DNA from: Mobula hypostoma
Taxonomy: Eukaryota
Reading direction: 5' to 3'
DNA length: 64,000 nucleotides
Assembly: GCF_963921235.1 (NCBI RefSeq)
Contig: NC_086110.1
Span: 9,486,001-9,550,000 of the forward strand
Position 1 is the stretch's first letter, and the number at the start of each line of letters is the position of its first letter. This document shows, piece by piece, positions 4,310-61,472 of this stretch. The notes under the pieces were generated by a model, which was given only the letters and a program-made list of their open reading frames with translations, was not told the DNA's origin and ran no database searches. The position numbers and the translations under genes were made by a program.

Positions 4310-5889
4310 CAGTGGCATGAAAAAGTTTGGGCATCCCTGGTCAAAATTTCTCTTACTGTGAATAGCTAAGCGAGTAAAAGATGACCTGATTTCCAAAAGG
4401 CTTAAAGTTAAGTATGACACATTTCTTTAATAGCTTAAGAAAGGTTACATTTTTTTATTTCCATTTTTTACAGTTTCAAAATAACAAAAAAGGAAAAGGG
4501 CCCGAAGCAAAAGTTTGGGCACCCTGCATGGTCAGTACTTAGTAACACCCCCTTTGTCAAGTATCACAGCTTGTAAATGTATTCTGTAGCCAGCTGAGTC
4601 TTTTAATTCGTGTTTAGGGGATTCTAGTTCTGTGAAATTCTGGAAGCAAACGTCACACCGCCTGGCATGCACTGCTCTTTTGAGGTCTATCCACAGATTT
4701 TTGATGCTGATTCAGTCGGGAGACTGTGAGGGTCAGGGTAAAACCTTCAGTGTGCACCTCCTGAGGTAGTCCATTGTGGATTTTGAGGTCTGTTTAGGAT
4801 CATTATCCTGTTGTAGAAACAATCCTCATTTCATTTTCAGCTTTTTTCCAGACGGTGTGGTGTTTGCTTCCAGAATTCTTCCATCTGCCAGTGAAATGTT
4901 CCCCGTGCCACTGCCTACAACACAAGCCCAAAGCATGATCGATCCACCCAGGTACTTAACAGTTGGAGAGGTGTTATTTTCATGAAATTCTGCACCCTTT
5001 TTTCTCCAAACATACCTTTGCTCATTACAATCAAAAAGTTCTAGTTTAACTTCATCAGTCCACAGGACTTTTTTCCTAAATGCATTAGGCTTGTTTACAT
5101 GTTCCTTTGTAAACCTCTGACGCTGAATTTTGTGGTAAGAACGCAGCAAAGATTTTCTTCTGATGAATCTTCCATGAAGGTCATATTTGTGCAGGTGTTG
5201 CTGCACAGCAGAACCGTGCACCACCACTCCAGAGTCTGCTAAATCTTTCTGAAGGTCTTTTGCAATCAAACGGGGGTTTTGATTTACCTTTCTAGGAATC
5301 ATACGAACAGTTCTCTCGGAAAGTTTTCTTGGTCTTCCAGACCTCAACTTGACCTACACCGTTCCTGTTAACTACCATTTCTTAATTACGTTACGAACTG
5401 AGGAAACGGCTACCTGAAAATGCTTTGCTATCTTCTCATAGCCTTCTCCTGTTTTGTCGGCATAAATTATTTTAAATTTCAGAGTGCTAGGCAGCTGCTT
5501 AGAGGAGCCCATGGCCACTGATTGTTCGGACAAGGTTTGAGGAGTCAGGGTATTTATAAAGCTTTGAAATTTGCATCACCTGGCCTTTCCTAACGATGAC
5601 TGTGAACAAGCCATAGCCCTAACATGCTAATTAAGGTCTGAGACCTTGGTAAACGTTATCTGAGAGCTCAAATCTCTTGGAGTGCCCAAACTTTTCTTTT
5701 TTTCTTCTTTCCTTTTTCACTCTAAAATTGTACAAAACAAAAATAATACATTAATCTTGCTTAGAATGTTGAAAAGAATGTTTCATCTTTAAGTTTATGA
5801 CTTTTGGAGATCAGTTCATCTTCTACTCGCTTAACTATTCACAGTAAAAGAAATTTTGACCAGGATGCCCAAACGTTTTCATGCCACTG
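4310..5889 (-). mobile_element. Tc1 DNA transposon with IR/DR-type TIRs and a disrupted transposase
   Basis: TA|CAGTGGCATGAAAAAGTTTGGGCA ... TGCCCAAACGTTTTCATGCCACTG|TA; long TIRs with inner repeats near 4510 and 5685; minus-strand GRPRKLS, WTDE, QDNDPK and SQSPD motifs (ORF 4826-5347, then a frameshift). Confidence 0.95.
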
Positions 5890-11785: not shown

Positions 11786-13035
11786 TGTCATAGGGGGGTG
11801 GCTGGGAACAGACCCAAGTGCAAGACACAGAAACTGAAGTACTAGGGACAGGACTAGGATACAGGGCGATGGCAAGGACATGGACAGGAAAACCAGGAAC
11901 CTGGAACAGGACTGGACAAGAGAGCTATGATCCCGGGCTTGGACTCCGAGCCAGAGACTGGACAAGGACCTGGGTCTTGCCTCTGGCTCGGACCCCAGAA
12001 CTAGGGAAGGAGGAGGCTTAGCAGGCAGGCAGGACGAGGCTGCAATCTTCAGGCTTGAGGCTAGAGTCTAGAGACTTGGCTTGGCTTGGAAAGAGGCTTG
12101 AGGCTAGAGGCTAGAGATTTGGCTTGGCGAGAGGCTCGAGGCTCGAGGCTAGAGGCTGGAGTCTTCAGGCTTGAGGCTTGGCAGGAGGCTGGAGGCTTGA
12201 GACTTGAGGCGAGGCGAGGCTGGAGGATGGAGGCAGGAGACTTGAGGCGAGGCGAGGCTGGAGGATGGAGGCAGGAGACGAGGCGAGGCGATGCTGGAGG
12301 ATGGAGGCAGGAGACTTGAGGCGAGTCGAGGCTGGAGGCAGGAGACTTGAGGCGAGGCGAGGCGAGGCTGGAGGCAGGAGACTTGAGGCGAGGCGAGGCG
12401 AGGCTGGAGGCAGGAGACTTGAGGCGAGGCGAGGCGAGGCTGGAGGCAGGAGACTTGAGGCGAGGCGAGGCTGGAGGCCGGAGGCAGGAGACTTGAGGCG
12501 AGGCTTGGCAGGCTCCTCCTGGGCAGAGCGCGGTTCACCTGGGCAGGGTGCGGATCACCTGGGCAGGGCGCGGATCACCACCCGACCTGGGACAGAACCA
12601 ACCCCAGGTAACGGCAAGACGGCCTGGTTTACCTGGGCGGAGGCAAGGGACAGGAAGGGAGCTAGGTACAGGGTGGCTCCAGGACAAGACTGCAGGCGAG
12701 ACGAGGCGAGAGTTACCGGCAAGACAAGGCAAGGCTTCTGGCAAAGCAAGGCGAGACGAGAACTTCAGACGAGGCGAGAGTTACCAGCAAGACAAGGCAG
12801 GGCTTCAGGCGAGGAAACAGAAGGCAGAGCAAGGGATACAAGGAGTAAGGACAAGAACAATCCAGCCGCTACACCCTGGTCTCCGAAGGTATTTATGCAG
12901 TTAGCCCCTACGAGCATCAGCTGTCTCAATTAGAGCTCAACAAGCCAGAAACAGGGTAGTCAGGAAAACCTGGAGCAAGGGTCGATGGACCGGACCGTGA
13001 ACCGGAATACGAACTTCACGGACCGGACCATGACA
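11786..13035 (-). mobile_element. Solo LTR (Gypsy-type) with an internal minisatellite
   Basis: TGTCAT...ATGACA termini; 5-bp TSD ATGGG at 11781-11785 and 13036-13040; reverse-complement similarity to 47213-48350. Confidence 0.88.
12040..12510. repeat. GA-rich minisatellite, unit about 26-31 bp (GAGGCGAGGCGAGGCTGGAGGCAGGAGACTT)
   Basis: Visible tandem units; these explain the repetitive ORFs 12149-12538 and 12265-12933. Confidence 0.95.
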
Positions 13036-15092: not shown

Positions 15093-15224
15093 TTAAGGCT
15101 TTGCCCTTTGCAGCTCAGCATACTCCGTGTTCTTACTCTTTGTCTTGAGCTTTTCTGTTTTTCCTGATTCAGATAATTTTACAGTGGCATATGTCAGTCC
15201 TTCCTGCACAGCCTCGTGCTTTAC
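15093..15224 (-). CDS. Exon 7 (last coding exon): VKHEAVQEGLTYATVKLSESGKTEKLKTKSKNTEYAELQRAKP*
   Basis: Acceptor tttttttcag|GTA, phase 0; ITIM LTYATV and ITSM-like TEYAEL; TAA stop. Confidence 0.9.
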   Translation of the reverse strand, partial: VKHEAVQEGLTYATVKLSESGKTEKLKTKSKNTEYAELQRAKP

Positions 15225-18200
15225 CTGAAAAAAAATTGCGAACATTTTCACTTTTTAAATCACCTTGTGCCTTGCTGATCAGGGACGATGTCAAAGCACC
15301 CACGATCCCCTTTAGAACGCACCACTAGTGTCAATACCATAACAATTATTGTCATTTTGCTATAGATTTCATGAGTCACGTGTTACATATGACCTATTAT
15401 GTACTGCAGAATCTCACTTGTGCGTACGATGACTCCTCTTCACCTTTCTGTCTCCGCTTCCGGCTGGAATTGCTCGTATCTACAGCAGCATAAGTCAGGA
15501 TTTTATTCTCTTCAACCTGGGTCAGAAATAGAAGTATTTTATATGACTGTTAAATGCGGTAATGAATGGTCTGGTGATTAGTCAGTGAGGAGAATAGCCT
15601 AGATTTCATATGAACGTTGAAAGGGGAATTGATAAAAAAAAACAATGCTGGTCCAATTGCATAGGCTCTGACCAGTATATAAATATGACTTAATTATGTC
15701 GGTTTCAGTAATTCAGTCAACATCAATAAGAGTAATTACTGAATCTAAACATAAGGATTGCATTGGCACACATTAATTATCTAAGTCCGTTATGAATAAA
15801 GCTACCAATTTATTTTTCTCCTACATATCCACTTACAGCAATGTCAGAACTACGGTCAGGCAAATGTGCAAATATAATTTGAATGATCCGAGGTAGAGAT
15901 TATTACTTTTGGAAATGTTCCGCCATATTATTCGCCCCATTCCTATATTTACTGAAACTTAAAACTCATTCGTGTATAAAAATGCACACAAACACGTACC
16001 AAATCTTCATGGTCGGCAGTATCAGTATCTCCGTGCTTACCTAGAAATGAATGACATTTACTTAAATATAATATTTCAGATTCTTATGGCTATCCACGAC
16101 TGTCCGATTCAAGTGGAACAAGAGCTTAGATTTACATTAAGGAAAGTTATGGAACTGAACGCTGAAATACAGAGGGCTGTATTAACTTGACATGGCTGTG
16201 AGTAGAATGAACACCATAACGTTAAGATATATTAAGACTTTTACAGAGTGTTTGATAAAAACATCCATCTGCAGCATCGAGGAAAATCAGTGACTGAACA
16301 TTATTGAACATTAGGTTCAATGAAGGTCAGACGAGAAAAGCGATAAAACTTGCAACACTGCAATACATGTTCCATTTATTCGATCCGTATGTGTTTTTAA
16401 CGAAAATAACGATCAAATTTCTCACAAAGAGGAAAGGCAAGACTGCTTTCATAGTAGGAGCTGTAGAGAGCACCTCGGGCTTGTGCGGGGAGCTGGAGAG
16501 CTTTGATCTCCGAGAATCTTAGAGCACTATTTTTTTCTCGAACAGTCTCCTGGTAGTTTCTGTTTAAGTTTGGTAGGTTATTTTGTTAGTCTCTGGGATT
16601 CCATGTCATTCATATTATTTAAGTGGACGCCTGACTTGTACTTGTTGCGGAATGCTAGTTTTGAGAACGCTCTGTCTCGCAATGTTCCTCGACCGAACCA
16701 CTGATATTCTGTTGAAATTCTTATGAATAGACTGTGGTTTCTGACTCTGTATCAGGGTCTGTCTTTCCTCCGCACTTGGACCCAGAACTGTGTGGACATC
16801 GCTCGGCTTGAGGTGAGAATGCTACCTGTTCTCATGTCCACAGTCGGAGCTTTTCTTGTCTATGTTCAAGGTCTTTCCGGTTCTCAAAGCTTTGTCATGG
16901 TCGAGGCATCCTCGGTTCTCAAGGTCGTCAGTATCTTCAACGTCTTTAAGGTTACTAGGGGCCCTCTAGTTTTCTCATGGCCCATTTAATGTTTCCTCGG
17001 TTTTTATCAATGTTGTCTCTGTCTCGAGATCCCGAGGTCCCACTCGAGTTTCGTAGGTGCCTGCCGAGTTCCGCAGATCTCACTGGGCTGTCAGATGCCA
17101 GCCATAGAAGCATAGAAAACCTACAGCATAATACAGGCCCATCGGCCCACAATGCTGTGTCGAACATGTACGTACTTCAGAAATTACCTAGGTTACCCAT
17201 AGTCCTCTATTCCTCTAAGCTACTTAGGGAGACGGTACTGTAATGAGCACTGTAATGGGAGCACGGGAGCATCGGCTCCAAGATTTTCAGAGCACTTAAT
17301 TTGATTAATAGTTGTTCATTGTTTGGACTTCTTTGTATTTTACCTCGTTCTTTGTAATGCAGTCTCCTGGTGCTTTCGGTTTAAACTTGTTAAATTCATT
17401 TTGATAAACTCGTGGGATTCTGTGCTACTTGTATTACTTAAGTGGCCGTCGGAATAGCGCTTATTGCAGGGTCTTAGTTTTGAGAATGTTACAGTCAGGA
17501 TGAGTGCTAATGACTGAACCTAAGTGTGGAGGAAACACTAAAACCCCTGTAAAGATGGCAGGCAGGGCTTATTAATAGGGATTCCAGCAAAACAATGGTA
17601 ATTCGGCCCAGTCACACTATGAAACATAACTTTCTTACAGCTAGGACTCCACGATAAGTGCAAATCGGGAGTGTGTTTAATCACAGAACGTACAATACCC
17701 ATGTCAGTGAAAATAAACTTATCAAATTTGAAGAAAATCAAATTTGGGTGCTCTAGAAATCTCGCACCTAAGCGTCCTTCGGCTCCCTGTGCAGGTCCAA
17801 AGAGCTCATTACAACTACATCTCGGGTGTTAATCGGCTGAGCCATCGTTGTCCTGTTGGAATTCGTATAGATCCACTGTCTTGACTGGCATTATCATTGC
17901 GGTGTGGAGTTCCAAGGAAGTGGAATCTTAACTGTGAATATGGCGGCCTTGGGTCGCTGGAGGACTCTCACAGATACAGGCAAATGATAACTTTAAAAAA
18001 CAGTGTGAAGAAACAATTCTTACAGAGAAATACATTTTAGGATGCAACAAATAAGAACAGTCGTCTGCATTTCCTAAGGAACAGGCTAGATAATGCATTG
18101 AGAAAAACCCTCTCTGTGGATTGAGGATCTTTAAATTTGTACAATTATTTTTCCTGAGACATTTCCACATGTATGAACACGGAAAGCGTCTTCTTTATGT

Positions 18201-21200
18201 TCATTACCTCTAGAATTGACATGGATATCACAGTACTCCGGCACGGATTTTATGAATCAGTTCATTAGGTTATATTGGGCTGAGCGCAGGTAGATGGGAC
18301 TCGGTGAGAGTAAGCGTTCGGCACGGACTAGAAGGGCCGAGATGGCCTGTTTCCGTTTTGTAATTGTTATATGGTTAGATATCATTAATTACATATCGCA
18401 TACTCGATCTTCCTCTTGTAAATGATCAGAACACGATTTCAATTATAAAAATGGAATTACTTTCGTTCTGGAATTATTCTGTTCGTGTGAAGTTTCCTCA
18501 TGCACGAAAACGGAAGTAAAATGCATTATTTACTCACGGTGTTACCTGGAAACAGACAATAAGCCCAATACTTACTTTTATTCATGAAAATGCATTTCTT
18601 GCCAGCGATAATTAGAAGTATCAAAATTGCCATGCCACCAATTGCGCAGCCAAAAGCCCAGATGGTTGTAAATTTGCCATCGAGTTCTACAATATTAGAA
18701 AGGTAGATTGTGATTTCTGTTTAGTGGATATTATTTAAAGAATAGGTTTTGGAACTATTCGTTGATTCAACGGATTTTAAGTAATTTTTAAAAAGTGCAA
18801 TATGTGGTCTGAATGATCGGAGTTCTGTGAAATAACTGCACTCTATCAGCTTCCAGTGTGTTGAATTGTGGTCAAAGCGAATGGGATTTCAGGTGAACAG
18901 ATACTAGTGAAGGCAGTAACGTTTATGTTGTTTGACTGGTATTGATATTACAACAATATATGAGGCTTCATAGTCCCTATAGTCTCAGAAATATTCTTTT
19001 GTTGAAAGTTCTATAAGCTTGCAACATAACCTCTTGACTTTTGAATTCAACGCTCTGACTAATAAAAACGGGCCTTCTTAATAACCTTATCGACACTTTC
19101 TAGGAGCTATGGATTTAGAATCCAAGGTCTCTCCTCTAAGCAACACTGTTAAAAGTTTTGTGGCACTGTCTCCTTGCATTAGCCCTGCCAAAGTGCAACA
19201 CCTTACATTTACGAGTTGCCTCACCATCTGACATTTTCTGCCCACATTTGCAACTGATCTATATCACGCTGTATTTTTGCAGTATTCTACACTATCTACA
19301 ACTCCACCAAGATTGAATAGTTCACAATCTTACTAACCCACCCATCTGCATTTTCATCCAAGTCATTTCTATACATCACAAACAGCAGAGGTCCCAAACA
19401 ACAGAAAATGTGCAGCACACATCGCTGTGGAGCACCATCCATTACAGACCTCCAGATCGAATAAGTTCCTTGAACCATTTCCCTCTGTCTTCCATGCGCA
19501 AGCCAGTTATGAATCCGAACAACTAATTTGCTGCAGACCCCAAACACCTTAATCATCTGGAGTGGCCACCCACGAGCGACTTTGTCAAACATATGACTAA
19601 ATTCCACGTAGACAACTTCCACTGCCCAATCTTCACCAATCTCTCTCGTCTCGTTAAAAACGCAATCAAGTTAGTAAGTCACGAGCTGCCCCGCACAAAG
19701 CCATACTGGCTCTCTCTAATTCGGCCAAATACTCATATATCCAGTCCGTTAGAATTTTCTCCAGCCATTTCCCTACCACTGACGTGAGACTCACCAGTGT
19801 ATAGTTCCCAGGATTTTCCTTGATCCTTTCTTACATAGAGATACAACATTAGCCACTCGCTGGTGCTCAGAGACCTGACCTACGCCTAGGCAGGACACGA
19901 AGATACCCGTCAAGACCCCAGCATTTTCGTCTCTTCCCTCCTTCAATAGATCGAGGTAAATTCATTTAGGCCCTGGGGACTCAAAGATCTTAATACTCAC
20001 CAAGAGGCTCAAGCTGACTGCTTAGTAGAAACTCACCACTCCACCTTTTATACATACACTGAAAGCTGTCTGGACTAGCCGACTATTTCTAGAAAATTAG
20101 AACTAGGGGATATTGCAATGTATATTGACTTCATCACCTAATGTCATCAACACCAACAAAATTAGAATTCAACTGCAAGTCAGAAAATTTAATTGCGTGT
20201 TCACTTCATACCTCGGTAAGAACTGGGAACAGTGTGTATAGCAATGGCAGGAGTCCTTAGCGAGATATGTTGCACCAAACATATGTAAACAGTCTCGTTC
20301 ACCTCTGATCGTTTTACTTGCAAGGAACTGGAAACTTTAAACAACCGTTCAGTATTTTCGTGTTTATAGGTACTTGTATCTGTTGTGGCCGTAGTACCGT
20401 TTTTATACCATGTAACAGTTAATTCTCCAGGGTAAAACTCAGCCGTTTCACAGACAAGTGCCACAGTCGCAGATGAGTCCTTGAGAACCCTGGATGAAAG
20501 GGTCAATGGAGTTGGAGCAGCTGTGGGGTATAAAATGTAAAACAAAACATTTTGAGGGGAGGAAATTAAACACAGAATGTGAGAGAATAAAGGCATCCTC
20601 TGTAAGGCCGTGTTTTTATCAGTAAATCTGCACCTATCAGCCTGTCTTTCAAGTGCCAAACAGATGAATTACTGATATTGGTTAGCTCACACAATGGGGC
20701 GCAAGAAGCCGAGATTGGTTCGGATTTATATTAGCTTGCTCTTCAGTTTGTAGTTTTGCTTGGTATGAAATATAGAATACCTGCTGTCATTCTAACCTTT
20801 CCATTTTTTTCTGTATAAAAAAAATGAATTGTAAAACGAGGCAGTAAACGAAGCTTTAGATAATGCATTTAGCAGAGTTAACAAATTTTGTTGGGTCCTT
20901 ATATTTCCAGGAATCTCAAAGTGATATGGTAACGTTATATAATAATTTCAGATGTTCCCGCTCACTCATTCTACTCACCACACACTGTCAGGTTTGATTC
21001 TCCTCCTTCTCCTATGATTTTTCCGTCACGCATGACTACGCACTGATAGATTCCCGTATCCTGGGCAGTCGCGTTCAGCAGTTGAAAATAGCCCCCTCCT
21101 TTATTTTTGCTGCCTATTCTCTTCCTGCCAGTAAGTTCATTTTGTAGGTATTCATTCTCCCCCTGCTTCTGCCAGCGCACTTCAATTCCTGACTGGGCAT

Positions 21201-21609
21201 ACGTAAGAGGGATTATGCAATGGAAAGTAATGTTTCCTCCCATCCATATAATCTCTCGATCAGGAATCTGTGTCACGATAATCGAAGCTTCTTCAGCAAC
21301 TATTAAAACGTGTTGAAATTGGTTAGTTGTATTCAACGTGGCATTAAACATTTCAGAACACATTTTGGCATGGAAGGTAGGAAGTATATCAGATCATAAG
21401 ACCATAAGACATAGGAGCAGAAATAAGCCATTTGTCCCATTCGGTCTGCTCCGCCATTCAATCATATATTAAAGCAATAGATTCTACTAAATTGAGGTAA
21501 TCATTCTTCTTCATATTCTAGTACTTAGAAAAGTTTGAAATAACGTACAAATACCTGAGCAAGTGATCCTCGAGAGAGACAGAAACAAGAACAGAAACAT
21601 TGCAGTCAT
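15093..21609 (-). CDS. Seven-exon gene for a type I IgSF inhibitory receptor (L-VJ-C1-TM-4 Tyr motifs), SIRP-like/non-rearranging antigen-receptor-like, 355 aa
   Basis: Exons 21609-21555, 21299-20979, 20520-20212, 18686-18576, 16040-16000, 15516-15418 and 15224-15093 total 1068 nt with no internal stop. All introns are GT-AG with matching phases (1,1,1,1,0,0). Confidence 0.9.
15418..15516 (-). CDS. Exon 6: VEENKILTYAAVDTSNSSRKRRQKGEEESSYAQ
   Basis: ttctgacccag|GTT ... CAA|gtgaga; 99 nt, phase 0-0; ITIM LTYAAV; SSYAQ|V is completed by exon 7. Confidence 0.9.
16000..16040 (-). CDS. Exon 5: (S)KHGDTDTADHEDL, membrane-proximal spacer
   Basis: catttctag|GT ... TTG|gtacgt; 41 nt, phase 1->0, supplies the phase change needed between exons 4 and 6; conserved in the paralog at 61473-61513. 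Confidence 0.85.
18576..18686 (-). CDS. Exon 4, transmembrane: (E)LDGKFTTIWAFGCAIGGMAILILLIIAGKKCIFMNK
   Basis: ctttctaatattgtag|AA ... AAA A|gtaagt; 111 nt, phase 1-1; 21-residue hydrophobic stretch followed by a KK stop-transfer. Confidence 0.88.
19000..19990 (-). mobile_element. Degraded CR1 RT fragment in intron 3
   Basis: ORF 19296-19622 carries decayed DF..AFDKV and G.PQ..LGPLLF motifs. Confidence 0.8.
20212..20520 (-). CDS. Exon 3: Ig C1-set domain
   Basis: ttttataccccacag|CT ... CGA G|gtatga; 309 nt, phase 1-1; LVC..EFYP..LTVTWYKNG ... VSSSLQV ... YICLVQHISL. Confidence 0.93.
20979..21299 (-). CDS. Exon 2: Ig V-set domain with a J-like G strand
   Basis: CTAAC branch point, ttttaatag|TT ... 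TGT G|gtgagt; 321 nt, phase 1-1; VTQ.P, FHC, VRWQK, DTGIYQC, IGEGGESNLTV. Confidence 0.93.
21555..21609 (-). CDS. Exon 1: signal peptide MTAMFLFLFLSLSRITCS
   Basis: ATG, hydrophobic core, TCA G|gtattt phase-1 donor joining the V exon in frame; second in-frame ATG at 21600. Confidence 0.85.
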
Positions 21610-31005: not shown

Positions 31006-34000
31006 TGTAATGGTATTTCTGTAAAAGAAATGTTTTGGGTTATGGTTAGAGATAACGGATTGTTTGAAATGTGAGTTGGTTCTTTTGTCGAACGGGAAAG
31101 GAACAAAGAAGAAACTGGAGCGAACTGGTCGTAAGATACGACCCGGTGGGGAGCCCGTGATTCGATGGAGCCAAGCGGCGAGATCAATTGAGGATCGGTG
31201 AATTGATCCCCAACTTGTGAACATTTGACTGTTTAATTATAATGGGCCCTGTTTCTTTCATTTCTTTACTAACCCTTTAGTTCAGTTTCATAAATATAAT
31301 TCTTACACAGCATTCACAGAAACCGGGGTTTGGGGTAGGAGATCCGTCTCAATCTTAAGAGTCTGGAGGGACCTAGATCTACGCAGGCGAGGAAACCAGC
31401 AAGGTTTCATTTGTGGGGTATCGTCCCAGATCGGTTTCGTTGGATGCTTTCTGATTGCCTTGACCATTGATCCGGTGGCTTGCCTGTTTAACCCTGTGTT
31501 AAACTATTGTTCAATAAAGTGATTAAGATACGTGGCTACGGACGCTGCAGGGGCTGAGCGGTGGTGCGAATCCACGGGGTTACCGGTAACAAATGCGTGT
31601 GTATTGATTACATTCGTAATCCTAATGAATTGTTAATTCGGATTTTAAATACCGTTAAAGCATTAGGAACAGTTTCGATCATGCAGCAGATGGCTGACAG
31701 AATGGCGGGCAAAGAATTTGTTATACGTACTTCGGACTTGCGCTGACGTAATGGCATTGAAACTGCCTGGTACCACTGGGGCTCAGGGATAGGGAGGAGC
31801 GGACGTGGGCTCTTCATACTTTCCGGGAGGAGGGGAGTGTAGGAGAGCCTGCCGAATCGGAAGCCGAGTTTCCCTTACCTGGGGGGTGAGACAGTAAGGA
31901 CAAGTAGCTCTCGTTTCTGCGGAGCGAGGGGAAGGAGCGGTATGATGTGAAAGGTCTAATAAGTCCTCCAGCGTGGGGTGAGCATTCTGTGTTGGTAGCG
32001 ACCCTTACCTTTCTGGCTAATAAACGGCAAATGCCTAGGTTCAGAGTCCCAGCCAGGGTAGGCAAGAATGTTCTCGGGACATGAAGCCCACCCCTAAAGG
32101 GGAAGAGTGGTATAAGACAGTCCTCTCAGATGGTGTATGAGTGGTAGTGCTCTGATGACGTAAAAGATAACGATGGCATATAGAGTTTGAGGCGGACAGA
32201 TACGGACGTAGTGAGATCCCTAATGACACAGAATCCCTTTGCTACCTCTGCAGGCTACACACAAGCGCTAGAAAATGCTGTTGGCGTGCCGGGAAACACA
32301 AAGGAACTTATGATGGGGTTCTAGAAAATGTTTCAGGAGAAAGGGGCGAAACTTTCCGCCTACAGTTTTCGGTGAGAGAGGTGGCTGAGTTGCCTGCGGC
32401 TAGGTGGTGATGATGGAGGTGGTGGAGGTGCGGGGGGTGGGGGTGATGGACATTCAAATGACTGAGGTGAGTCAGTTAAGAATGGGCCAAGTGGCGAAAG
32501 GCGCTCTGTCATAGGTCTTGATCGCTTGGGGTCTCCAAATGTCTCGTAAGACGCACCCCTTCCCTCGTTTGTCGAGGTGATCAGAGAACTAAAAGAGGAG
32601 GATAATGCGATGGAGGCGCGGGAGTCCTCTGTCAGCAGGGTACAGCCCTCGGTAGTAGCCTCTTGGCTGAAGTGACCACTGATAGCCCACGCTGGGGAGT
32701 GGCAAAGGAGCTTATGGCAGAGTTTAGGACTGAGATGTCCCGCTTGTGACTGGCGGGTACGGCCACACCGCACGATAAAACCGACACGGAGTCGAGGGGA
32801 CGGACTAAGCAGAGGGCTGCAAGCGAACCGGGCCTTGCGAGAAGAAGAGCGACCGGTATTGTCAATTATAACCGTGGTGAAGAGGGACATTTCGGGCGGG
32901 TGTGTGAAGGACTGGAAAACACTCGGTGAGGGAGTTCCCAGGTACCGAAGCGGAGAGACCCAGTGAGGGAACGGTGTGACGTATCGTGGGGGAACACGTT
33001 TCCAGCAATATATCAAGGAACACCCTAAAGCAAGAAACCCGATTCCTGAAGGCTTAGCGTGGCCAAGCTCCAGTGTATCGCTACGGATTGAGGGTATTAA
33101 TGCTAGAACCATATCTGACACCGCTCTCAGGTTACTCTGCTCTACCGTTCTTTTTATAAAATATATTTGACGCATTTACCATTGACGCCATTCAGTGCAC
33201 TGGAGATCTAGGGTCTTAGTACGGATTACTATCCTTATGATGGTTATTTGTCATTGAAGCTGGAGTATGCGGAGACAGATGAAGGAATAGTCATTCAACT
33301 TTAGGGACTTCGCCGTACCTGGAAGTTGGAAGAAGAGGTTGATAGAGAAGATGTTGAAGCTGGAAGATGTATTTTCTACTGACGAGTTTGATGTGGGTTG
33401 TTCAACACCATCCGGGTTACAGATGATACCCCGTTCAGAGAAAGGTCGCGGCGATCGACACCTGCAGAGGTGGAGGATGTTCGGCAGCATCTACGAAAGC
33501 TGGGATCATCACTGAGTCTAGAAGCCCCTATGCATCCCCAATAATAGTGGCCAAGAAGAATTAATGAAAGGTACGGATGTGTGTGAACGATCGGACTCTA
33601 AACAGCTGTAGAGTCCCCGACCAGTATACGGTCCCGAGAATCGAGCACCCGCTGGCCTGCCTGAGTGGTGCGAAGTGGTTCAGTGTGCTGGACCTGAGGA
33701 GTGGGTATTATCAGATCCCCATCAGTGAGGTTGATAAAGAGAAGACGGAATTCATGCGTCCACTGGGATTCTTCCAGTTTGAAAGGATGCCCCATTGCAT
33801 AGCGGGAGCGCCGGCGACTTCCCAGCGTATCATGGAAAAAACGGTGAGGGTTATGAACTTGCTTGAGGTATTGGTGTACCAGGATGATCTCATTGTGTTC
33901 GGTTCCACCTTTAAGGACAATGACGCAAGGCGACTGCAGGTGCTGCGCCGCCTGAAAGCTGAAGGGTTAAAACTTTCCCAGGGCAAGCGCCATCTGCAAG

Positions 34001-37000
34001 ACATCTGTCAACTACGTTGGGCACATAGCCTCACAGATGGAGTAGCTAAGATCCATCTAAGATAGAGGCTGTGACCACATGGCCAAGGCTCCAGACTGTG
34101 AGAGCCTTGTGCTCGTTCCTTAGATTCTGTGGGTACGATCGGTGGTTCGTGAAGGACTACTCTAAAGTGAGTGACCCTTTAAATCAGCTTATATGCGGTT
34201 ACCGTACCTTGGGGAAGAATGGGATGCGAAATGTAAAGAGGTCTTTCTGATGCTGAAGGAGCTGCAGACGAAAGCACCTTTACTGGCTTATGCAGACCCC
34301 CGGTCGCCTTATGTATTGCATACAGATGCCAGCAGGGAGGGCTTAGGGGGTGTTCTGCATCAGGATCAGGGCACAGGGTTGAGATCTGTCGCGATTGTCA
34401 GCCGGAGTCTGTCACCCTCTGATCGAAACTACCCTCTGCACAAATTGGAGTTCCTGGCATTGAAATGGACTGTGGTGAATAAGCTAGGAGTCATGGCCCC
34501 GTCTGGCAATTCCCCATCTTGCTATTACCTCCTTAATTGGACCTTAATCCCCTCGTCTGATTTCCAATCATCCCCAGTTCCACTATTACAGCACAACTGG
34601 TTCCCATTAGTGAACATAGGATAAAACTCGGGCGGCACAGCCATGCTTTGCCAGTTCGTTGGTCGACTAGTGTGAGTAAACCTCGTTTCCTGGTTCCTTG
34701 GGACTGTCAGTTCTAAGCTCCGCATCATTTCCCGGATCTCGGTGTAAAGACTCTCCCGTTCGCGGTGGTGCTAACGCCTCACGACACTGCCTCCGTGCCT
34801 GCGTCCTGCACTTGAGTTCGTCCTCAGCCTCATCCTTGCAACAGAACGAATTGGACAAGAATGAACCCAGCGGACACGGACCCCGTGCAACAGGCCCTTT
34901 CCAGCCAGGGCTACCCACTGGAAGCCCACGACCAACTGCTCAGAAACGTCACGGAAAACCTTTGTGCGCCGTCCAAGAATGTGAGGAAGGTCAGTGAGCA
35001 GATTGACCCGGTATCCGCTTCCCTTACTCCAACCCTTCCAAGAACCCTGACTGACCAAACCGCACAGACTGGGATGGCTACGCCACTTGATCGGCAACAC
35101 AATCCCCTCGAGAAGCGTACGTACCCGAACCGGAACCCTACTCTGGGGACCTAGAGAAGTGCCGGGCCTTCTTATTACAAGGCTCTTTTGTCTTTGAGCA
35201 ACAGCCACGTGGGTACATCTCGGACGGATCAGAGATTGCATACATCATGGGGCTGTTCCGAGGGATGCCCTGGCACGGGCCACCGCGATCTGGGACAATC
35301 GACCAGGCGTCTGTTACTCCTTCCCCTCCTTCGTCTCCGAAATGAGGAAGATCTTTGAACAGCCCATTCCCGGCAATGACGCCGCTAAGCGCTTGCTAAC
35401 TCTCTGTCAGGGTTCGCGAAAAGTAGCAAAATACTCCATCGAGTTCCGAACATTAGCGGCGGACCCTGAGTGGAATGACGAGGTACTGCGGGAAGGGTTC
35501 CGACAGGGCCTCTCAGATACGGTAAAAGATGAACTCGCAGCGAGGGATGATGCGGATAGCCTGGACTCTCTTATCTCTCTAGCTACCAGGCTCGATAATC
35601 GCCTTTAAGAGCGTCTGACAGAAAAGACCAGTGGGCTTCTCGGGTCAGCCCACGTCCCACCTTACCATCTTCAGCCAATCTTCCTTCCCCAGCCGCTCCA
35701 AATATAGCTCCTGCTCGGACCGTCCCTACTATCCTGGGGAAGGAACCGATGCAGCTGGGACGGAACCGTCTCTCCCCTGCCGAGGAGGCGGAGAGCTGGG
35801 GATTGTTACTATTGCGGCCGCAGACCTTTTCGTCCGCCACGTTTTCCGCCTCCACGGAATCCCCGCTGACATCGTCGCCGATCGAGGTCCCCAATTCATC
35901 TCGCAGGTGTGGAAGGCCTTCTGTCAAGCCTTAGGTGCCTCGGTCAGCCTGTCATCCGGGTTCCACCCACAGACGAACGGGCAAATGGAACGGGTCAACC
36001 AAGACTTGCAGGCGACGCTACGTAGTATTACAACCAACAATCCCTCTACCTGTATTGCCAACCTCGCGTAGATTGAGTAAGCCCAAAACTCTCTGGTTAG
36101 TACTGCCATCGGAAGGTCTCCCTTCGAGTACCAACACCGCTGTTCCCCGCGCAAGAAGAGGAGATTGCAGTGCTGTCTGTTCAGGCCCGTATCGTTTGGT
36201 GCCGCAAGGTTTGGGAAGACACACGCACGGCCCTGCTCAGATCAGCCGACCGCGATAGGAGGATTGCCGATTGACGCCGGACTCCTGCGCATGTGTATCG
36301 ACCTGGGCAGATGGTGTGGCTTTCATCTGAAGACATCCGTCTCAAAAAGGAGCCGAAGAAACTCGCCCCTCGCTTCCTGGGACCTTTCCGAATCGAAAGT
36401 ATCATCAACTCCACAGCAGTCCGACTTAAACTACCAAGATGTATGCGTATCCACCCTACTTTTCATGTTTCCCAATTAAAACCACTTTCCTTCAGCCCCT
36501 TGTGCTCTCCGACCGAAACCCCTCCACCCGCCCGTATCATCGACAACCATCCGGCATACACCGTCCGGCGGCTACTAGATGTGCGCCGTCGGGGCAGGGG
36601 CCTCCAACAGCTGGTCGACTGGGAAGGGTACGGCCCAGAGGAGCGTTCCTAGGTTCCCCGCTCCTTCATTCTTGACCCCCCACCCCTCCATCCAAGACTT
36701 CCATCGGGACCATCCGGACAAACCTGGACATTCGCCTGGAGGCTTCCGTTGGGGGGGTGGGGGGTGGACTGTCATGGTCCCGTCTGGCAATTCCCCATCT
36801 TGCTATTACCTCTTTAATTGGGCCTTAATCCTCTCGTCTGATTTCCAATCATTCCCAGTTCCACTAATTACAACACACTCTCTAACATAGGATAAAACTC
36901 GGGCGGCACAGTCGTGCTTTGCCAGTTCATTCTAATGTGAGTAAACCTCGTTTCCTGATTCCTTGGGACTGTCAGTTCTAAGCTCCGCATTATTTCCTGG

Positions 37001-39400
37001 ATACTCTACGTAAATCTTGTCTCCGTGTAAAGACGCTCCTGGATACCGGTTCCCCAGTCACGGCGGTGCTAACGCCTCACGACTCTGCCTCCGCGCCTCT
37101 GTCCTACATTTGGGTCGTCCTCAGCCTCGTCCTTGCAACACTAACTGCCAAGTTCGAGGTGCGGACGAACAACAGCCCACTAACCTATAGCCTGACCTCG
37201 GCGAAACTGGATGCCACAGGCCATCGATTGTTGGCGGCGTTATCTGGCTATGATTTCAACCCGAAGTGATTACCGGGAAGTCGGAACATTGATGCTGATG
37301 TGTTGTCCGGACGTGCGCATGAAGGGTTGGACGGGGCCGGAGAGTGGGAGAGCGTTCCTGCCCCTGGAGTCAAAGCTCTGTGCCAGTTTTCCATCACGGG
37401 GAAGGCAGAGGAAGTCCAAAGCCAGAATCGAGCGGTAGATAATTTGGGAGCTTCTGATGGTGTCATTCCACAAGCTTACTGCAACCTGAGTGCTCTGATG
37501 ACAAAGCAGTTGGGAAGTGGCTGCCGCCTAACGAAATGACACGTCCGTTGGTACTGTTTAGTCAGCAGTTGCGAAATGGGACATGACCCAAGCTGACACG
37601 ATGAAACTCTCCGCGGTCTATCTACTACTAAGAGAATAGTCCAGACTGGAGTTGAGGAACCAGATTCTATACCGGGTCTCGTCGCCTCCAGACCGGCCTC
37701 TGAGTTACCAGCAGATTCTGCCTGAGAAATATCGGAGGATTGTGTTAAAGTCACATAGTGACTTAATGATGGTTCCGGTCATGTGGGGGCTGACAGACCG
37801 ATGGATTGTTTAGAGATCAGTTCCACTGGCCCCGAATGAAGCCGGGGATCGAAGAATACCGGTAGTCGTGCATTCGATGTATATGGAGAAAGACGTTGCC
37901 TATGAGGGCTGTTCTGTTATCCCACCTGCAGAGTGCAAGGCCACTTGATGTGGTGTGTATGGATTTCGTTTCGAAAGAGCCTGACACCAGCAACATGGCG
38001 AATGTCTTGGCTATTACGGATTACTACACCAGAAGTACACACCGTGGCCAAAGTGTTATGGGGGAAGTATTTCGTTTATTATGGCCTCCTCAGGCGGATA
38101 CTTAGCTATCAGGGAAGGGATTTCGAGAGTAGACTCATACATGAGTTACTGACCATGCTTGGAATCGAGAAGTCCAGGACTGCGCCTTATCACCCACAGA
38201 GTGATCTCCAGCCTGAGAGGTTTAGTCGACTATTGCTAGACATGCTCGGAACCGTGAAGATCAGTAAAAAGAACAAGTGGAGTCAACATGTTGGACATCT
38301 CGTCCACTGCTACCGTTGTACACAGAATGCAGCTACCGGGTACTCGCCGTAGGGCGCGAAGCGAGGTTGACCGTTGACCAATGTTTTGGGGCTGCTCGGG
38401 AAGAACTATAACAGAAAACCTATCTGACGTGTGTGTTTGAAATGAGAAGGGAGCTGAAAAGGGCTTATGAACTCTCTGACGTCTCGGCTACCAAGCTGAA
38501 TTCAGGAAATAAGCAGAAGTACAACCAAAAGGTTAGGTTCTCCCAACTAATGCCTGGAGAACGAGTCCTCATAAAGACTTTGAGGCTACCTGGGAAGCAT
38601 AAGTTGGCTGACCGCTGGGCAGCTATCCCCATGTAGTGGAGAGCCAGATGTCAATCCTACCTTTTTTACGGGTGAACCCAAAGGTTGGGAATGGGCCTGT
38701 CTAGATTCTCCATCAGAACCAACTTCTACCTCTGGGACAAGAGTACATGTTGATCCGAGCCTGACCTGAACCCTACACCTAATAAGAGGACTCTAGGGCG
38801 AAGTGCAGAAACCGAAGGATCAGCAACGCAAAGGATTACACTGGAACAGATCACGGAATATGATACGGACTCGTAGGACGAGGAAATGTGGTGTGGTATA
38901 CGCTGCCCTTCGCAAACTCCCCAATAATTGATGAAGTGATTCACAACCTCACGCTGAGGCGGGTGAAATGGGGGGAACGAGCAGTGGGGAAGCATGTTTG
39001 CGGTTAGAAAATAAAGGGAGGCTGGGCTCTAAAGTAACTGGACATGAGGGTGAGCTCAGCCAAGTCACAAAAGGCCCTAAGTTGTCGGGAGGCACAAGTA
39101 ATGGACAGGCAGGAGCCTCCCCAGGTAGATAGGAAAGAGCCCATGGAGCGTCTGAAACTGAAAAATTAGATGGAGTACGGAGGTCCCAAAGACTCAGGAG
39201 ACCCCCGGACAGACTGGGCTATGTCGCACCCGAGGAGAAGAGTATGGCACTATCCCCTTCGTGAACCATGTCACTGCCATTTACACCTGGGTTGGACTTC
39301 CTTCTTTGTATGAAGGAGTGACAAATTATCTCAACGTCATGAAAACATGACTAATTTTGGTGTGGGGGGTGGGCAGCGTAGTATTCCTTTCAGGAAATCA
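31006..39400 (+). mobile_element. Gypsy LTR retrotransposon (degraded gag-pol); 3' LTR largely missing
   Basis: Putative 5' LTR 31006-31409 followed by a tRNA-Pro-like PBS; RT (LDLRSGYYQI, YQDD), RNase H (HTDASREGLG), integrase (PYHPQ); purine-rich tract near 39360. Confidence 0.85.
34490..37140 (+). mobile_element. Nested non-autonomous chromodomain Gypsy (LTR-gag-partial IN-CHD-LTR)
   Basis: LTRs 34490-34843 and 36770-37140; gag (YSIEFRTLAA..WNDEVL), integrase ([15 protein letters not shown]), chromodomain ([12 protein letters not shown]), PPT 36751-36767. Confidence 0.9.
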
Positions 39401-56850: not shown

Positions 56851-56864
56851 ACTTGATGAATGAG

Positions 56865-57581
56865 GCTGGGGCCCAAGCCTCGCGGATCCCGCGGCCAAGC
56901 TCCTAACCTGCAAGCCAAGCTCAAGACCCAAGACCCCAGCCTGCAAGCCAAGCTCAAGACCCAAGACTCCAGCCTGCAAGCCAAGCTCAAGACCCAAGAC
57001 CCCAGCCTCAAGCCAGGCTCAAGACCCAAGACCCCAGCCTCAAGCCAAGCTCAAGACCCAAGACCCCAGCCTCAAGCCAAGCTCAAGACCCAAGACCCCA
57101 GCCTGCAAGCCAAGCTCAAGACCCAAGACCCCAGCCTCAAGCCAAGCTCAAGACCCAAGACCCCAGCCTCAAGCCAAGCTCGAGACCCAAGACCCCAGCC
57201 TGCAAGCCAAGCTCAAGACCCAAGACCCCAGCCTGCAAGCCAAGCTCAAGACCCAAGACCCCAGCCTCAAGCCAAGCACAGGCCTCTAGACCCCAGCCAT
57301 CCTGTCATGAAGCCATGTCATGTCCTTGCCTGGTTCTGGGGTCCGAGCCCGAGGCAAGACCCAGGTTCTGGGTTCTTGTCCAGTCTCGGGCTCGGAGTCC
57401 AAGCCTTGTCTCCAAGTCCATGGTTCCAAGTCCTGGTCCAGCTTTCCCTAGCCCAAGTCTGCGTTCTTGTCCCTGCTCCTGGGTCTGAATCATGTCATGT
57501 CCCTACTCTAGTCAAGTCCTGTTCATTGTACTTCAGTGTCTGTGTCTCGCATTTGGGTCTGTTCCCAGACCGTATGTGACA
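56865..57581 (+). mobile_element. 5'-truncated LTR of the 47213 family with a minisatellite
   Basis: Right end CTGTGTCTCGCATTTGGGTCTG...TGTGACA; tandem CAAGCCAAGCTCAAGACCCAAGACCCCAGCCT units at 56890-57290; left end absent. Confidence 0.8.
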
Positions 57582-59977: not shown

Positions 59978-59984
59978 CTTCAAC
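59874..59984 (-). pseudogene. Paralog exon 6 disrupted by CR1; possible host/LINE chimeric exon
   Basis: Acceptor atttctggcccag|GTTGAAG matches gene-1 exon 6 for 7 nt, then LINE 5'UTR; GAG|GTAAGG donor at 59874 gives 111 nt, phase 0-0. Confidence 0.7.
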
Positions 59985-60304
59985 CTGGGCCAGAAATGAT
60001 AGTATTTTATTTAACTGTATAATGCTGTACAAATATCTGGTGATCAGTCAGTGAGCAGACTGGCCTAGATTTCATTTAAATATTGAAAACAGAACTGATA
60101 AATCTAATGCTATCCGAATTGAATAGGCTCTGGCTAGAATATATATTTGAATTATTCATGTCGATTTTATTAATTCAGTCAGCATCAGTAAGTGTAATAA
60201 CTGTCTCTAAGCATAAATATTAGATTTGTGCACATTTGTCATCCAAGTACTTTATGAACAATTTTAACAATTTATTTTTCTCTTCCTATATCCACTCATG
60301 GCGA

Positions 60305-61335
60305 CGTCACAACTACCATCAAGTAACTGTGCTTGCAACACTGTGTGTCCGACAGAGTGATCAGCAGCACTGGGGCTCCACAGGGGACTGTCTTGTCTCC
60401 CTTTCTCTTCACCATTTACACCTCAGACTTCAACTACTGCACAGAATCTTGTCATCTTCAGAAGTTTTCGGATGACTCTGCCATAGTTGGATGCGTCAGC
60501 AAGGGAGATGAGGCTGAGTACAGGGCTACGGTAGAAAACTTTGTCACATGGTGTGAGCAGAATTATCTGCAGCTTAATGTGAAAAAGACTAAGGATCTGG
60601 TGGTAGACCTGAGGAAAGAAAAGGTACAGGTGACCCCTGTTTCCATCCAGGGAGTCAGTGTGGACATGGTGGATGATTACAAATACCTGGGGATACGAAT
60701 TGACAATACAGTGGACTGGTCAAAGAACACTGAGGCTGTCTACAAGAAGGGTCAGAGCCGTCTCTATTTCCTGAGGAGACTGAGGTCCTTTAACATCTGC
60801 AGGACGATGCTGAGGATGTTCTACGAGTCTGTGGTGGTCAGTGCTATCATGTTTGCTGTTGTGTGCGGGGGCAGCAGGTTGAGGGTGGCAGACACCAACA
60901 GAATCAACAAACTCATTCGTAAGGCCAGTGATGTTGTGGGGATGGAACTGGACTCTCTCACGGTGGTGTCTGAGAAGAAGATGCTGTCTAAGTTGCATGC
61001 CATCTTGGTCAATGTCTCCCATCCACTACATAATATACTGGGTGGGCACAGGAGTATATTCAGCCAGAGACTCATTCCACCGAAATGCAGCTCTGAGTGT
61101 CATAGGAAGTCATTCCTGCCTGCGGCCATCAAACTTTACAACTCCTCCCTTGGAGGGTCAGACACCCTCAGCTAATAGGCTGGTCCTGGACTTATTTCAT
61201 AATTTACTGGCATAATTTACATATTATTATTTAAGGTTCTATTGCTATTTATTATTTATGGAGCAACTGTAACGAAAACCAATTTCCCCCGGGATTAATA
61301 AAGTATGACTATTACTACTACTACTACTGCTACTA
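60305..61335 (+). mobile_element. Rex1/Babar-like LINE 3' fragment in paralog intron 5
   Basis: Open 280-aa ORF 60333-61175 with GAPQGTVLSPFLF and FSDD; (CTA)n tail. Confidence 0.85.
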
Positions 61336-61472
61336 CTGTACAAACAAGACTAAAATGATCCGTCGCAGAGAATGTTACTTTAAGAAAGAGTTCCGACATG
61401 CTATCCACCTCATTGCTATATTTACTGAGATTTAAAACGCATTCATGAATTTTAAAAAAAACACACACGTAC

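What the first reader, a model, noticed from the sequence alone, without database searches (positions are those of the whole stretch)
15093..21609. Complete VJ-C1 Ig-superfamily inhibitory receptor among the transposons
Seen in sequence: seven minus-strand exons splice into an open 355-aa protein with a leader, V domain, C1 domain, uncharged TM and four tyrosine motifs. The ORF track shows only the two Ig exons. Established: C1-set domains are largely confined to antigen receptors, MHC, B2M, tapasin, SIRPs and a few relatives. Mammalian SIRP-alpha is V-C1-C1 with four Tyr motifs. Inference: this is a single-C1, SIRP-like or non-rearranging antigen-receptor-like inhibitory receptor of a cartilaginous fish, possibly from an uncharacterised family. 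Orthology cannot be assigned from this window.
Basis: partly seen in the sequence, partly recalled or inferred. Interest (0 to 1): 0.85.

Follow-up and report, generated by a model that had tools for sequence, protein, structure and literature searches.

The report
Devil-ray SIRP-alpha-like inhibitory receptor gene
This is a real, intact devil-ray gene for a surface receptor with one antibody-like variable domain, one constant domain and a four-tyrosine "brake" tail laid out like mammalian SIRP-alpha. RefSeq already predicts it, and it is one of many such unstudied genes in sharks and rays.

Summary
Seven minus-strand exons with GT-AG borders splice into an open 355-aa protein. That protein is letter-for-letter identical to the RefSeq model [quoted passage not shown] of Mobula hypostoma.

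It has a leader, a short V-type domain, a clear C1-set domain (Pfam E 2.7e-14), an uncharged membrane span and four ITIM/ITSM-type tyrosines.

Predicted orthologues exist in a stingray (82% identity), a sawfish (67%) and a skate. Every related family member I could name comes from a shark, ray or chimaera.

"SIRP-like" holds on several tests:
- SIRP-alpha is the best solved-structure sequence match.
- SIRP-alpha ranks first in the Swiss-Prot fold search.
- SIRP-alpha clusters are nearest in the ESM Atlas.
- A profile-profile comparison with amniote SIRP-alpha aligns V, one C1, the membrane span and the whole tail (99.8%, E 1e-29). All four tyrosines are in register with similar spacing.

It is not a plain SIRP. 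It has one C1 rather than two, and its C1 clade sits outside both SIRP C1 clades, with deeper branching unresolved. Its J-like motif has lost one glycine. I could not check transcription.

The scan has already flagged many members of this family elsewhere in this genome.

The parts
21555..21609 (-). Exon 1: start codon and hydrophobic leader (18 codons plus 1 nt)
   Evidence: ATG at 21609 and GT donor after 21555. Matches the N-terminus of RefSeq P0160.
20979..21299 (-). Exon 2: V-type Ig domain with a degenerate J-like G strand, all in one exon
   Evidence: AG/GT borders, phase 1-1. Pfam Ig_3 1e-8 and V-set 1.7e-7. Cys46, Trp61 and Cys105 are conserved across the family. No RSS-like heptamer-spacer-nonamer anywhere in the window.
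20212..20520 (-). Exon 3: C1-set Ig domain
   Evidence: Pfam C1-set 2.7e-14, 53.7 bits. Cys149, Trp163, Cys206 and His210 are invariant in the family. pLDDT is about 90.
18576..18686 (-). Exon 4: stalk, uncharged membrane span and start of the cytoplasmic part
   Evidence: Hydropathy peak at residues 236-258 with no charged residue. Modelled as a helix over 231-265.
16000..16040 (-). Exon 5: 41-nt cytoplasmic exon that keeps the frame open
   Evidence: Without it a stop follows one codon after exon 4. Its peptide is conserved in the stingray and sawfish orthologues. A near-identical exon lies in the paralogue at 61516-61473.
15418..15516 (-). Exon 6: first tyrosine pair (LTYAAV, SSYAQ|V)
   Evidence: Aligns with the first ITYADL / TEYASIQ pair of SIRP-alpha.
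15093..15224 (-). Exon 7: second tyrosine pair (LTYATV, TEYAEL) and stop codon
   Evidence: Aligns with the second LTYADL / SEYASVQ pair of SIRP-alpha. In both proteins 8 residues follow the last tyrosine.
19450..19495 (-). Alternative first coding exon of RefSeq isoform X3, inside a LINE fragment in intron 3
   Evidence: P0177 (142 aa) has 15 unique N-terminal residues that map to ATG 19495. A GT donor follows 19450, and the rest equals residues 229-355 of the main protein.

Best explanation
The locus is an intact protein-coding gene of the lesser devil ray (Mobula hypostoma). RefSeq already models it as 'tyrosine-protein phosphatase non-receptor type substrate 1-like isoform X1'. It encodes a type I membrane receptor with a leader, one short V-type domain, one C1-set domain, an uncharged membrane span and a 90-residue tail. 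The tail carries four ITIM/ITSM-type tyrosines in two exon-encoded pairs. It belongs to a large multigene family of sharks, rays and chimaeras. Several members lie on the same chromosome in each species sampled. That family is the closest cartilaginous-fish counterpart of SIRP-alpha found here. Inferred mechanism: the V domain binds an unknown ligand on another cell or a microbe. Src-family kinases then phosphorylate the four tyrosines. Each tyrosine pair docks the tandem SH2 domains of SHP-1 or SHP-2, which dampens activating signals in the cell, as SIRP-alpha does. Shown here: the gene model, the domains, the conserved motifs and the tail collinearity with SIRP-alpha. Inferred only: phosphorylation, phosphatase recruitment, the ligand and the cell type.
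For: Gene model: seven GT-AG exons give an open 355-aa frame identical to RefSeq P0160. Conservation: 82% identity to the stingray protein P0161 and 67% to the sawfish protein P0008, with all four tyrosine motifs kept. Against the stingray, the tail is the best conserved part (84%, versus 79% for V and 77% for C1). The C1 tree groups this gene with the stingray (100/98) and then with sawfish plus skate (100/97). Domains: C1-set E 2.7e-14, and the ectodomain model has pLDDT around 90. SIRP link: SIRP-alpha 2wng is the best PDB sequence hit for the ectodomain (2.7e-17). Bovine and human SIRP-alpha rank first in the Swiss-Prot fold search. The two nearest ESM Atlas clusters are SIRP-alpha (0.96). 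hhalign of the family against 12 amniote SIRP-alpha sequences gives 99.8%, E 9.7e-30, with V, one C1, the membrane span and the tail aligned to the C-terminus. Tyrosine spacing is 22/14/23 with 8 residues after the last tyrosine here, against 24/17/26 with 8 in pig SIRP-alpha. The family tail profile scores 24-33 bits on SIRP-alpha tails. Full shuffles reach at most 10 bits. Shuffles that keep the four motifs in place average about 14 bits. The best non-family C1 matches per domain in a 1.8-billion-protein library include coelacanth and lungfish SIRP-like proteins. The coelacanth protein in turn retrieves amniote SIRPs at E 1e-45 to 1e-64.
Against: No transcript was seen. The only record of this protein is the genome assembly, so expression rests on RefSeq's isoform models, which I could not inspect. 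The protein has one C1 domain where SIRP-alpha has two. The C1 tree puts the family (98/97) outside both the SIRP d2 and d3 clades and leaves its position among Ig, MHC and multi-C1 domains unresolved. The V profile matches SIRP V only weakly (20-33 bits). In the PDB it matches many other Ig domains as well or better. ITIM tails can converge, and I had no other ITIM-receptor tails to use as controls. RefSeq names family members inconsistently as SIRP-like, tapasin-related, B7-H6-like, CD276 or Ig lambda-like.
Confidence: 0.8

Rival explanations
1. It belongs to a cartilaginous-fish V-C1 family that descends independently from the antigen-receptor/UrIg stock. On this view its SIRP-alpha-like tail is convergent or was acquired by exon shuffling, so it works like SIRP-alpha but is not its homologue.
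For: The family C1 clade is separate from SIRP d2 and d3 and sits in an unresolved group with IgE, MHC class I and shark multi-C1 domains. The family C1 profile hits UrIg2 and Ig heavy chains as strongly as SIRP. V-domain similarity to SIRP is weak. About 14 of the 24-33 tail bits come from the four motifs alone.
Against: The AU test does not reject the family joining SIRP d2 (p 0.40) or all SIRP C1 domains (p 0.33). The alignment to SIRP-alpha runs end to end, including the membrane span and the linkers between tyrosines. The alternating T-Y-A and E-Y-A..Q pattern and the 8-residue C-terminal stub are shared.
Confidence: 0.2
2. It is a B7/butyrophilin-type ligand (B7-H6, CD276 or PD-L-like V-C protein) rather than a SIRP-type receptor.
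For: B7-H6 gives the highest TM-score in the PDB fold search (0.42/0.65, rmsd 5.1). CD276, B7-H6, PD-L1/2 and butyrophilins follow SIRP-alpha closely in the Swiss-Prot fold search. Some family members are auto-named NCR3LG1-like or CD276.
Against: The constant domain scores 53.7 bits on C1-set but only 24.3 bits on each of the CD80-like and butyrophilin C-domain models. No B7 or butyrophilin protein appears among the listed best PDB sequence hits, whereas SIRP-alpha is first. The four-tyrosine tail aligns with SIRP-alpha.
Confidence: 0.04
3. It is an unexpressed or decaying copy in a fast-turnover gene cluster. On this view the open frame reflects recent duplication rather than function.
For: No transcript contig carries the protein. 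The J-like motif has lost its second glycine. The neighbouring paralogue in the window is disrupted by LINE insertions. The introns are full of transposon fragments.
Against: All seven exons are open with canonical splice sites. Predicted orthologues from sawfish and skate, besides stingray, group with it in the C1 tree. In stingray and sawfish the exon-5 peptide and all four tyrosine motifs are retained. The tail is the most conserved region. RefSeq models several isoforms.
Confidence: 0.06

Closest known systems
SIRP-alpha (SHPS-1 / PTPNS1) and the SIRP family of tetrapods and lobe-finned fishes
   Same: Both have an N-terminal V domain with a J-like G strand, followed by C1-set domain(s), an uncharged membrane span and a C-terminal tail. 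In both, the tail has four tyrosines in two pairs (T-Y-A..., then E-Y-A..Q) with similar spacing and 8 residues after the last tyrosine. SIRP-alpha is the top match by PDB sequence, Swiss-Prot fold search, ESM Atlas features and profile-profile alignment. Some shark and ray family members have a short tail and an arginine in the membrane span, resembling SIRP-beta-type partners.
   Different: The ray protein has one C1 domain instead of two. Its V domain is about 10 residues shorter between the cysteines (59 versus 69). Its C1 domains form their own clade outside SIRP d2 and d3. The ligand is unknown and CD47 binding is untested. The family is much more expanded, with about 80 clusters at 50% identity among the top 150 hits.
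UrIg and UrIg2, non-rearranging antigen-receptor-like genes of elasmobranchs (PMC12227049; PDB 9dmx)
   Same: Both have a non-rearranging single-exon V with a J-like end, followed by C1-set domain(s), in cartilaginous fish. UrIg2 is among the top three PDB profile hits.
   Different: UrIg is secreted with three C1 domains. UrIg2 has nine to eleven C1 domains. A term search of that paper found no mention of ITIMs. The gene here has a single C1 and a four-tyrosine inhibitory tail.
B7 / butyrophilin V-C proteins (B7-H6, CD276, PD-L1)
   Same: They share a two-domain V-C ectodomain and one membrane span. Fold-search E-values are similar, and B7-H6 gives the best TM-score.
   Different: Their C domains are of the CD80-like or butyrophilin type, and the ray domain scores far better on C1-set. 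From general knowledge, not tested here, they lack a J-like motif and a SIRP-type tail.
Ig light chains and TCR chains
   Same: They share the V-C1 layout and fold. Hundreds of antibody light chains fill the PDB fold search, and TCR-beta appears in the Swiss-Prot fold search.
   Different: There is no V/J split and no recombination signal sequence. Signalling runs through the protein's own ITIM tail, not through associated CD3 or CD79 chains.

Membership tests
SIRP family (SIRP-alpha type) | N-terminal V-set domain with a J-like G strand encoded in one exon | tested here: inconclusive
   It is V-type by Pfam and sits in a single exon. The domain is short, its match to SIRP V is weak (20-33 bits), and the G-x-G motif is degenerate in this copy.
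SIRP family (SIRP-alpha type) | Two membrane-proximal C1-set domains (V-C1-C1) | tested here: not met
   Only one C1 exon lies between the V and membrane-span exons. hhalign skips one SIRP C1 domain.
SIRP family (SIRP-alpha type) | Uncharged membrane span plus a cytoplasmic tail with four tyrosines forming two ITIM pairs | tested here: met
   All four tyrosines are in register with pig, condor and turtle SIRP-alpha, and the score exceeds the shuffle controls.
SIRP family (SIRP-alpha type) | C1 domains group phylogenetically with SIRP d2 or d3 | tested here: inconclusive
   The family forms a separate clade (98/97) whose deeper position is unresolved. The AU test does not reject union with SIRP (p 0.33-0.40).
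SIRP family (SIRP-alpha type) | Binds CD47 and recruits SHP-1/SHP-2 when phosphorylated | not testable with these tools
   This needs binding and phosphopeptide assays.
SIRP family (SIRP-alpha type) | Conserved synteny with the tetrapod SIRP cluster | not tested
   No non-family gene lies in the 64-kb window. DNA and neighbours around this gene and its stingray orthologue could not be fetched.
Shark, ray and chimaera V-C1 receptor family (unnamed; RefSeq 'SHPS-1-like', 'SIRP beta-1-like' and others) | C1 domain scoring at least 99 bits on the family profile, against at most 55 bits for anything else; family V motifs (WWKQGENEYL, DSGVYHC, GNGTGSxLxV) | tested here: met
   This protein scores 144 bits on the C1 profile and 148 bits on the V profile. 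It lies inside the starred family clade.
UrIg / UrIg2 | V followed by three or more C1 domains, either secreted or with a membrane span but no ITIM tail | tested here: not met
   This gene has one C1 and a four-tyrosine tail, against the architecture given in PMC12227049.
Rearranging antigen receptors (Ig/TCR) | Separate V and J segments flanked by recombination signal sequences | tested here: not met
   The V and J-like parts are contiguous in exon 2. No heptamer-spacer-nonamer occurs in the window.

The most novel reading that the evidence does not exclude
The shark, ray and chimaera V-C1 family to which this gene belongs is the true cartilaginous-fish branch of the SIRP lineage. That would place a V-C1 receptor with the complete four-tyrosine SHP-binding tail in the last common ancestor of jawed vertebrates. 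The second C1 domain of tetrapod SIRPs would then be a later gain, or a loss in this family. A 2022 review calls the origin of SIRPs unknown. This reading would give it a concrete answer and supply a living single-C1 form close to the hypothesised myeloid V-C1 precursor of antigen receptors.
Probability: 0.5. Interest if true: 0.6.

Novelty: new variant of a known kind. Interest (0 to 1): 0.4.

Why it matters
C1-set domains are almost confined to antigen receptors, MHC molecules and a few associates. SIRPs have been argued to sit close to the precursor of antigen receptors (PMC2785349). A 2022 review says SIRPs are documented in mammals, birds and lizards and that their origin is unknown (PMC9652883). 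An expanded family in sharks, rays and chimaeras with a V-C1 ectodomain and a tail collinear with SIRP-alpha would push that lineage back to the base of jawed vertebrates. It would also offer natural single-C1 and paired inhibitory/activating forms for study. This one gene adds little by itself. RefSeq already predicts it, and the scan has flagged many relatives. Its value is as a clean member, with predicted orthologues in three other batoids, for expression and binding experiments.

Tried and rejected
- A profile search of the 5.8-billion-protein set with the family alignment returned only 8 hits, because the word filter saturated. It gave no distant relatives.
- The family V profile against the PDB was dominated by summed scores of multi-domain I-set proteins and did not discriminate.
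- The family C1 profile ranking was likewise inflated for multi-C1 chains. I re-scored per domain locally instead.
- The PDB fold search was swamped by antibody light chains.
- The C1 phylogeny could not resolve the family's sister group. It also lacked named TCR, Ig light-chain, tapasin, B7-H6, beta-2-microglobulin and MHC class II references, which I had no way to fetch.
- Contig look-ups for this gene and its stingray orthologue gave no DNA and no neighbours, so synteny and dN/dS were not possible.
- Pfam found nothing significant in this tail. SIRP-alpha tails and two chimaera tails hit the SIT (SHP2-interacting adaptor) model only weakly.
- Paper searches found no study of SIRP-like genes in cartilaginous fish.
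- Scan notes held nothing on tetrapod SIRP-cluster neighbour genes.
- Tapasin-related identity was rejected. The protein starts directly with leader and V, so there is no room for the long N-terminal region that precedes the matched Ig domains in tapasin-related protein (hit residues 198-468).
Full report
**What is in the sequence**

The exons are E1 21609-21555, E2 21299-20979, E3 20520-20212, E4 18686-18576, E5 16040-16000, E6 15516-15418 and E7 15224-15093. Every intron starts with GT and ends with AG. E1 to E4 are joined in phase 1, as is usual for Ig-superfamily genes. The joined coding sequence is 1068 nt and gives 355 residues plus a stop. Dropping the 41-nt E5, or using the alternative donor inside E6, breaks the frame. 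The model is therefore tightly constrained.

**The model is already in RefSeq**

A protein search seeded with a sawfish relative returned P0160. This is a 355-aa RefSeq protein of Mobula hypostoma named [quoted passage not shown]. It is identical to my translation at every residue. The gene lies on an 80.6-Mb contig of assembly GCA_963921235.1.

A second RefSeq product is P0177, labelled "LOC134356430 isoform X3" (142 aa). It starts at ATG 19495 inside a LINE fragment in intron 3. It uses a GT donor after 19450 and joins E4.

**Domains**

- Pfam scores E3 as C1-set (E 2.7e-14, 53.7 bits, cut-off 21). This is well above the CD80-like and butyrophilin C-domain models, at 24.3 bits each.
- E2 scores as Ig_3 (1e-8) and V-set (1.7e-7).
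- An AlphaFold model built on 22 family members has pLDDT around 90 for both Ig domains. It shows a membrane helix at 231-265 and a disordered tail.
- The V domain is short. There are 59 residues between its cysteines, against 69 in pig SIRP-alpha. The model shows almost no C'/C'' strands.
- The family has a J-like G strand, G-T-G-S-x-L-x-V. In this gene it reads G-G-E-S-N-L-T-V, so the second glycine of the G-x-G bulge is a glutamate. "VJ" holds for the family and only loosely for this copy.
- No heptamer-spacer-nonamer signal occurs anywhere in the window.
- The membrane span has no charged residue.
- The tail has four motifs: LTYAAV, SSYAQV, LTYATV and TEYAEL. E6 encodes the first pair and E7 the second.

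**Relatives**

A search of 1.84 billion representative proteins with the C1 exon found 681 hits at E up to 0.001. I re-scored the best 150 per domain with a family profile, which shows a sharp gap. About 80 proteins score 99-169 bits, and everything else scores 55 bits or less.

Every family member whose source I could look up (about 35 proteins, counting isoforms) is from a shark, ray or chimaera: Mobula, Hemitrygon, Hypanus, Pristis, Amblyraja, Leucoraja, Heterodontus, Heptranchias, Mustelus, Scyliorhinus, Chiloscyllium and Callorhinchus. RefSeq names them inconsistently as SHPS-1-like, SIRP-beta-1-like, tapasin-related-like, NCR3LG1-like, CD276, Ig-lambda-like or class-II-beta-like. In each species, several members lie on the same long contig.

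In a maximum-likelihood tree of C1 domains, the family is one clade (98/97). This gene pairs with the red stingray protein (100/98), and then with sawfish plus skate (100/97). So an orthologue is predicted in each of the three other batoids sampled. Identity to the stingray protein is 79% in V, 77% in C1 and 84% in the tail. All four tyrosine motifs are kept in stingray and sawfish.

**Is it SIRP-like?**

Five independent tests say yes.

1. With the ectodomain as query, SIRP-alpha (2wng) is the best sequence match among solved structures (2.7e-17). It is just ahead of antibody heavy chains.
2. In the Swiss-Prot fold search, bovine and human SIRP-alpha rank first.
3. The two nearest ESM Atlas clusters by language-model features are SIRP-alpha clusters (score 0.96).
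4. The best non-family C1 matches per domain include coelacanth and lungfish SIRP-like proteins. The coelacanth protein retrieves bird, reptile and mammal SIRPs at E 1e-45 to 1e-64.
5. A profile-profile comparison of the family with 12 amniote SIRP-alpha sequences gives 99.8% probability and E 9.7e-30 over 335 columns. V aligns with d1. One SIRP C1 is skipped. The family C1 aligns with d3. The membrane spans align, and the tails align to the last residues.

**The tail**

In the tail, all four tyrosines are in register with SIRP-alpha. The pattern alternates T-Y-A with E-Y-A..Q. Spacing is 22/14/23 here against 24/17/26 in pig SIRP-alpha, and eight residues follow the last tyrosine in both.

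As a control, I scored shuffled SIRP-alpha tails against the family tail profile.

| Sequence scored | Bits |
|---|---|
| Real tails (pig, condor, turtle) | 24-33 |
| Fully shuffled tails | at most 10 |
| Four motifs kept in place, linkers shuffled | about 14 on average |

Of 500 motif-preserving shuffles, none reached the real score for pig or turtle, and 12 did for condor. The similarity therefore goes beyond the motifs themselves.

**Limits of the SIRP assignment**

- The protein has one C1 domain, not two.
- In the C1 tree, the family is outside both the SIRP d2 clade (100/100) and the d3 clade (100/96). Its position among IgE, MHC class I and shark multi-C1 domains is unresolved.
- The AU test does not reject joining the family to SIRP d2 (p 0.40) or to all SIRP C1 domains (p 0.33). 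That is permissive rather than supportive.
- The V profile matches SIRP V only weakly.
- UrIg2, the recently described non-rearranging shark antigen-receptor relative, matches the family C1 profile about as well as SIRP does. Its architecture is quite different, with nine or more C1 domains, and a term search of that paper found no mention of ITIMs.
- B7-H6 gives the best TM-score among solved structures. The C-domain type and the tail argue against a B7-type identity.

I file the gene as a SIRP-alpha-like variant, not as a proven SIRP orthologue.

**Mechanism**

By analogy with SIRP-alpha, ligand binding by the V domain would lead to tyrosine phosphorylation. The two tyrosine pairs would then recruit SHP-1 or SHP-2, giving an inhibitory signal. 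This step is established knowledge for SIRP-alpha and is inferred here, not shown.

The uncharged membrane span fits an inhibitory receptor. Some shark and ray members (P0166, P0168, P0060) instead have an arginine in the membrane span and a short tail. The family thus appears to contain paired activating forms, as SIRP-beta is to SIRP-alpha. The ligand and the expressing cells are unknown.

**Context**

- The window is otherwise made of transposon remains: LINE reverse-transcriptase fragments, a Ty3-type element and a Tc1-type transposase.
- The 3' exons of a second family member lie at about 59.9-64 kb on the same strand. It has a near-identical 41-nt exon at 61516-61473 and is broken up by LINE insertions.
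- Notes from the scan report a further member about 6 kb before the window. They also report many more along the same chromosome and on other pieces. Several earlier follow-ups reached the same "SIRP-like, unstudied family" reading.
- One note says the family also occurs in bony fishes and amphibians. My sampling found only cartilaginous fishes above the family score gap, with lobe-finned-fish SIRP-like proteins among the nearest outsiders.

**Literature**

C1-set domains are described as restricted to antigen receptors, MHC, tapasin, beta-2-microglobulin and SIRPs. SIRP-alpha has been proposed as close to the antigen-receptor precursor (PMC2785349). A 2022 review states that SIRPs are known from mammals, birds and lizards and that their origin is unknown (PMC9652883). 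I found no paper on cartilaginous-fish SIRP-like genes in the searchable library.

**Verdict**

This is a real, intact gene, correctly read by the first stage and correctly interpreted as SIRP-like. RefSeq already predicts it, and it is one of a large family that the scan has seen repeatedly. It is of moderate interest. Its main value is to the question of where SIRPs, and V-C1 receptors generally, came from. Transcription, ligand, signalling and synteny remain to be tested.

Noticed in passing
window 19450-19495 (-): RefSeq isoform X3 (P0177) takes its start codon and first 15 residues from a LINE reverse-transcriptase fragment in intron 3, then splices into exon 4. The product would lack the ectodomain and consist of the membrane span plus the four-tyrosine tail.
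   Followed up: partly
window 16000-16040 (-): Skipping the 41-nt exon 5 places a stop one codon after exon 4. The product would be a tail-less V-C1 membrane form. Whether this happens is unknown.
   Followed up: no
window 59700-64000 (-): The 3' part of a paralogue lies here. It has an exon-5 copy at 61516-61473 (one base different) and an exon-6-like acceptor near 59985 whose coding part is replaced. Intron sequence is homologous to this gene's intron 4. LINE insertions interrupt it at about 60333-61350 and 61660-63915. Its V, C1 and membrane-span exons lie beyond the window end.
   Followed up: partly
window 20982-20984 (-), residue Cys125: An unpaired cysteine sits at the V/C1 junction (LTVC|AAP). 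It is shared by the stingray and skate orthologues and by some shark and chimaera members, but is Tyr or His in others. It could form an inter-chain disulfide.
   Followed up: no
proteins P0166, P0168 and P0060 (alignment A1): Catshark, smooth-hound and stingray family members have an arginine in the membrane span and only a short tail. They look like activating partners of the ITIM-bearing members.
   Followed up: partly
protein P0015 (Amblyraja radiata): One skate family member has two nearly identical C1 domains in tandem (V-C1-C1). The C1 number therefore varies within the family, unless the gene model merges a duplicated exon.
   Followed up: no
window 12149-12933 and 56860-57579: Long open frames here are produced by tandem repeats, with repeated peptide units such as LASPQVSCLQPR and KLKTQDPSLQA. 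They look like repeat DNA rather than genes.
   Followed up: no
window 33577-38352 (+) and 4826-5347 (-): Remains of a Ty3-type retroelement (reverse transcriptase and integrase fragments) and of a Tc1-type transposase. Several LINE reverse-transcriptase and endonuclease fragments lie elsewhere in the window.
   Followed up: partly
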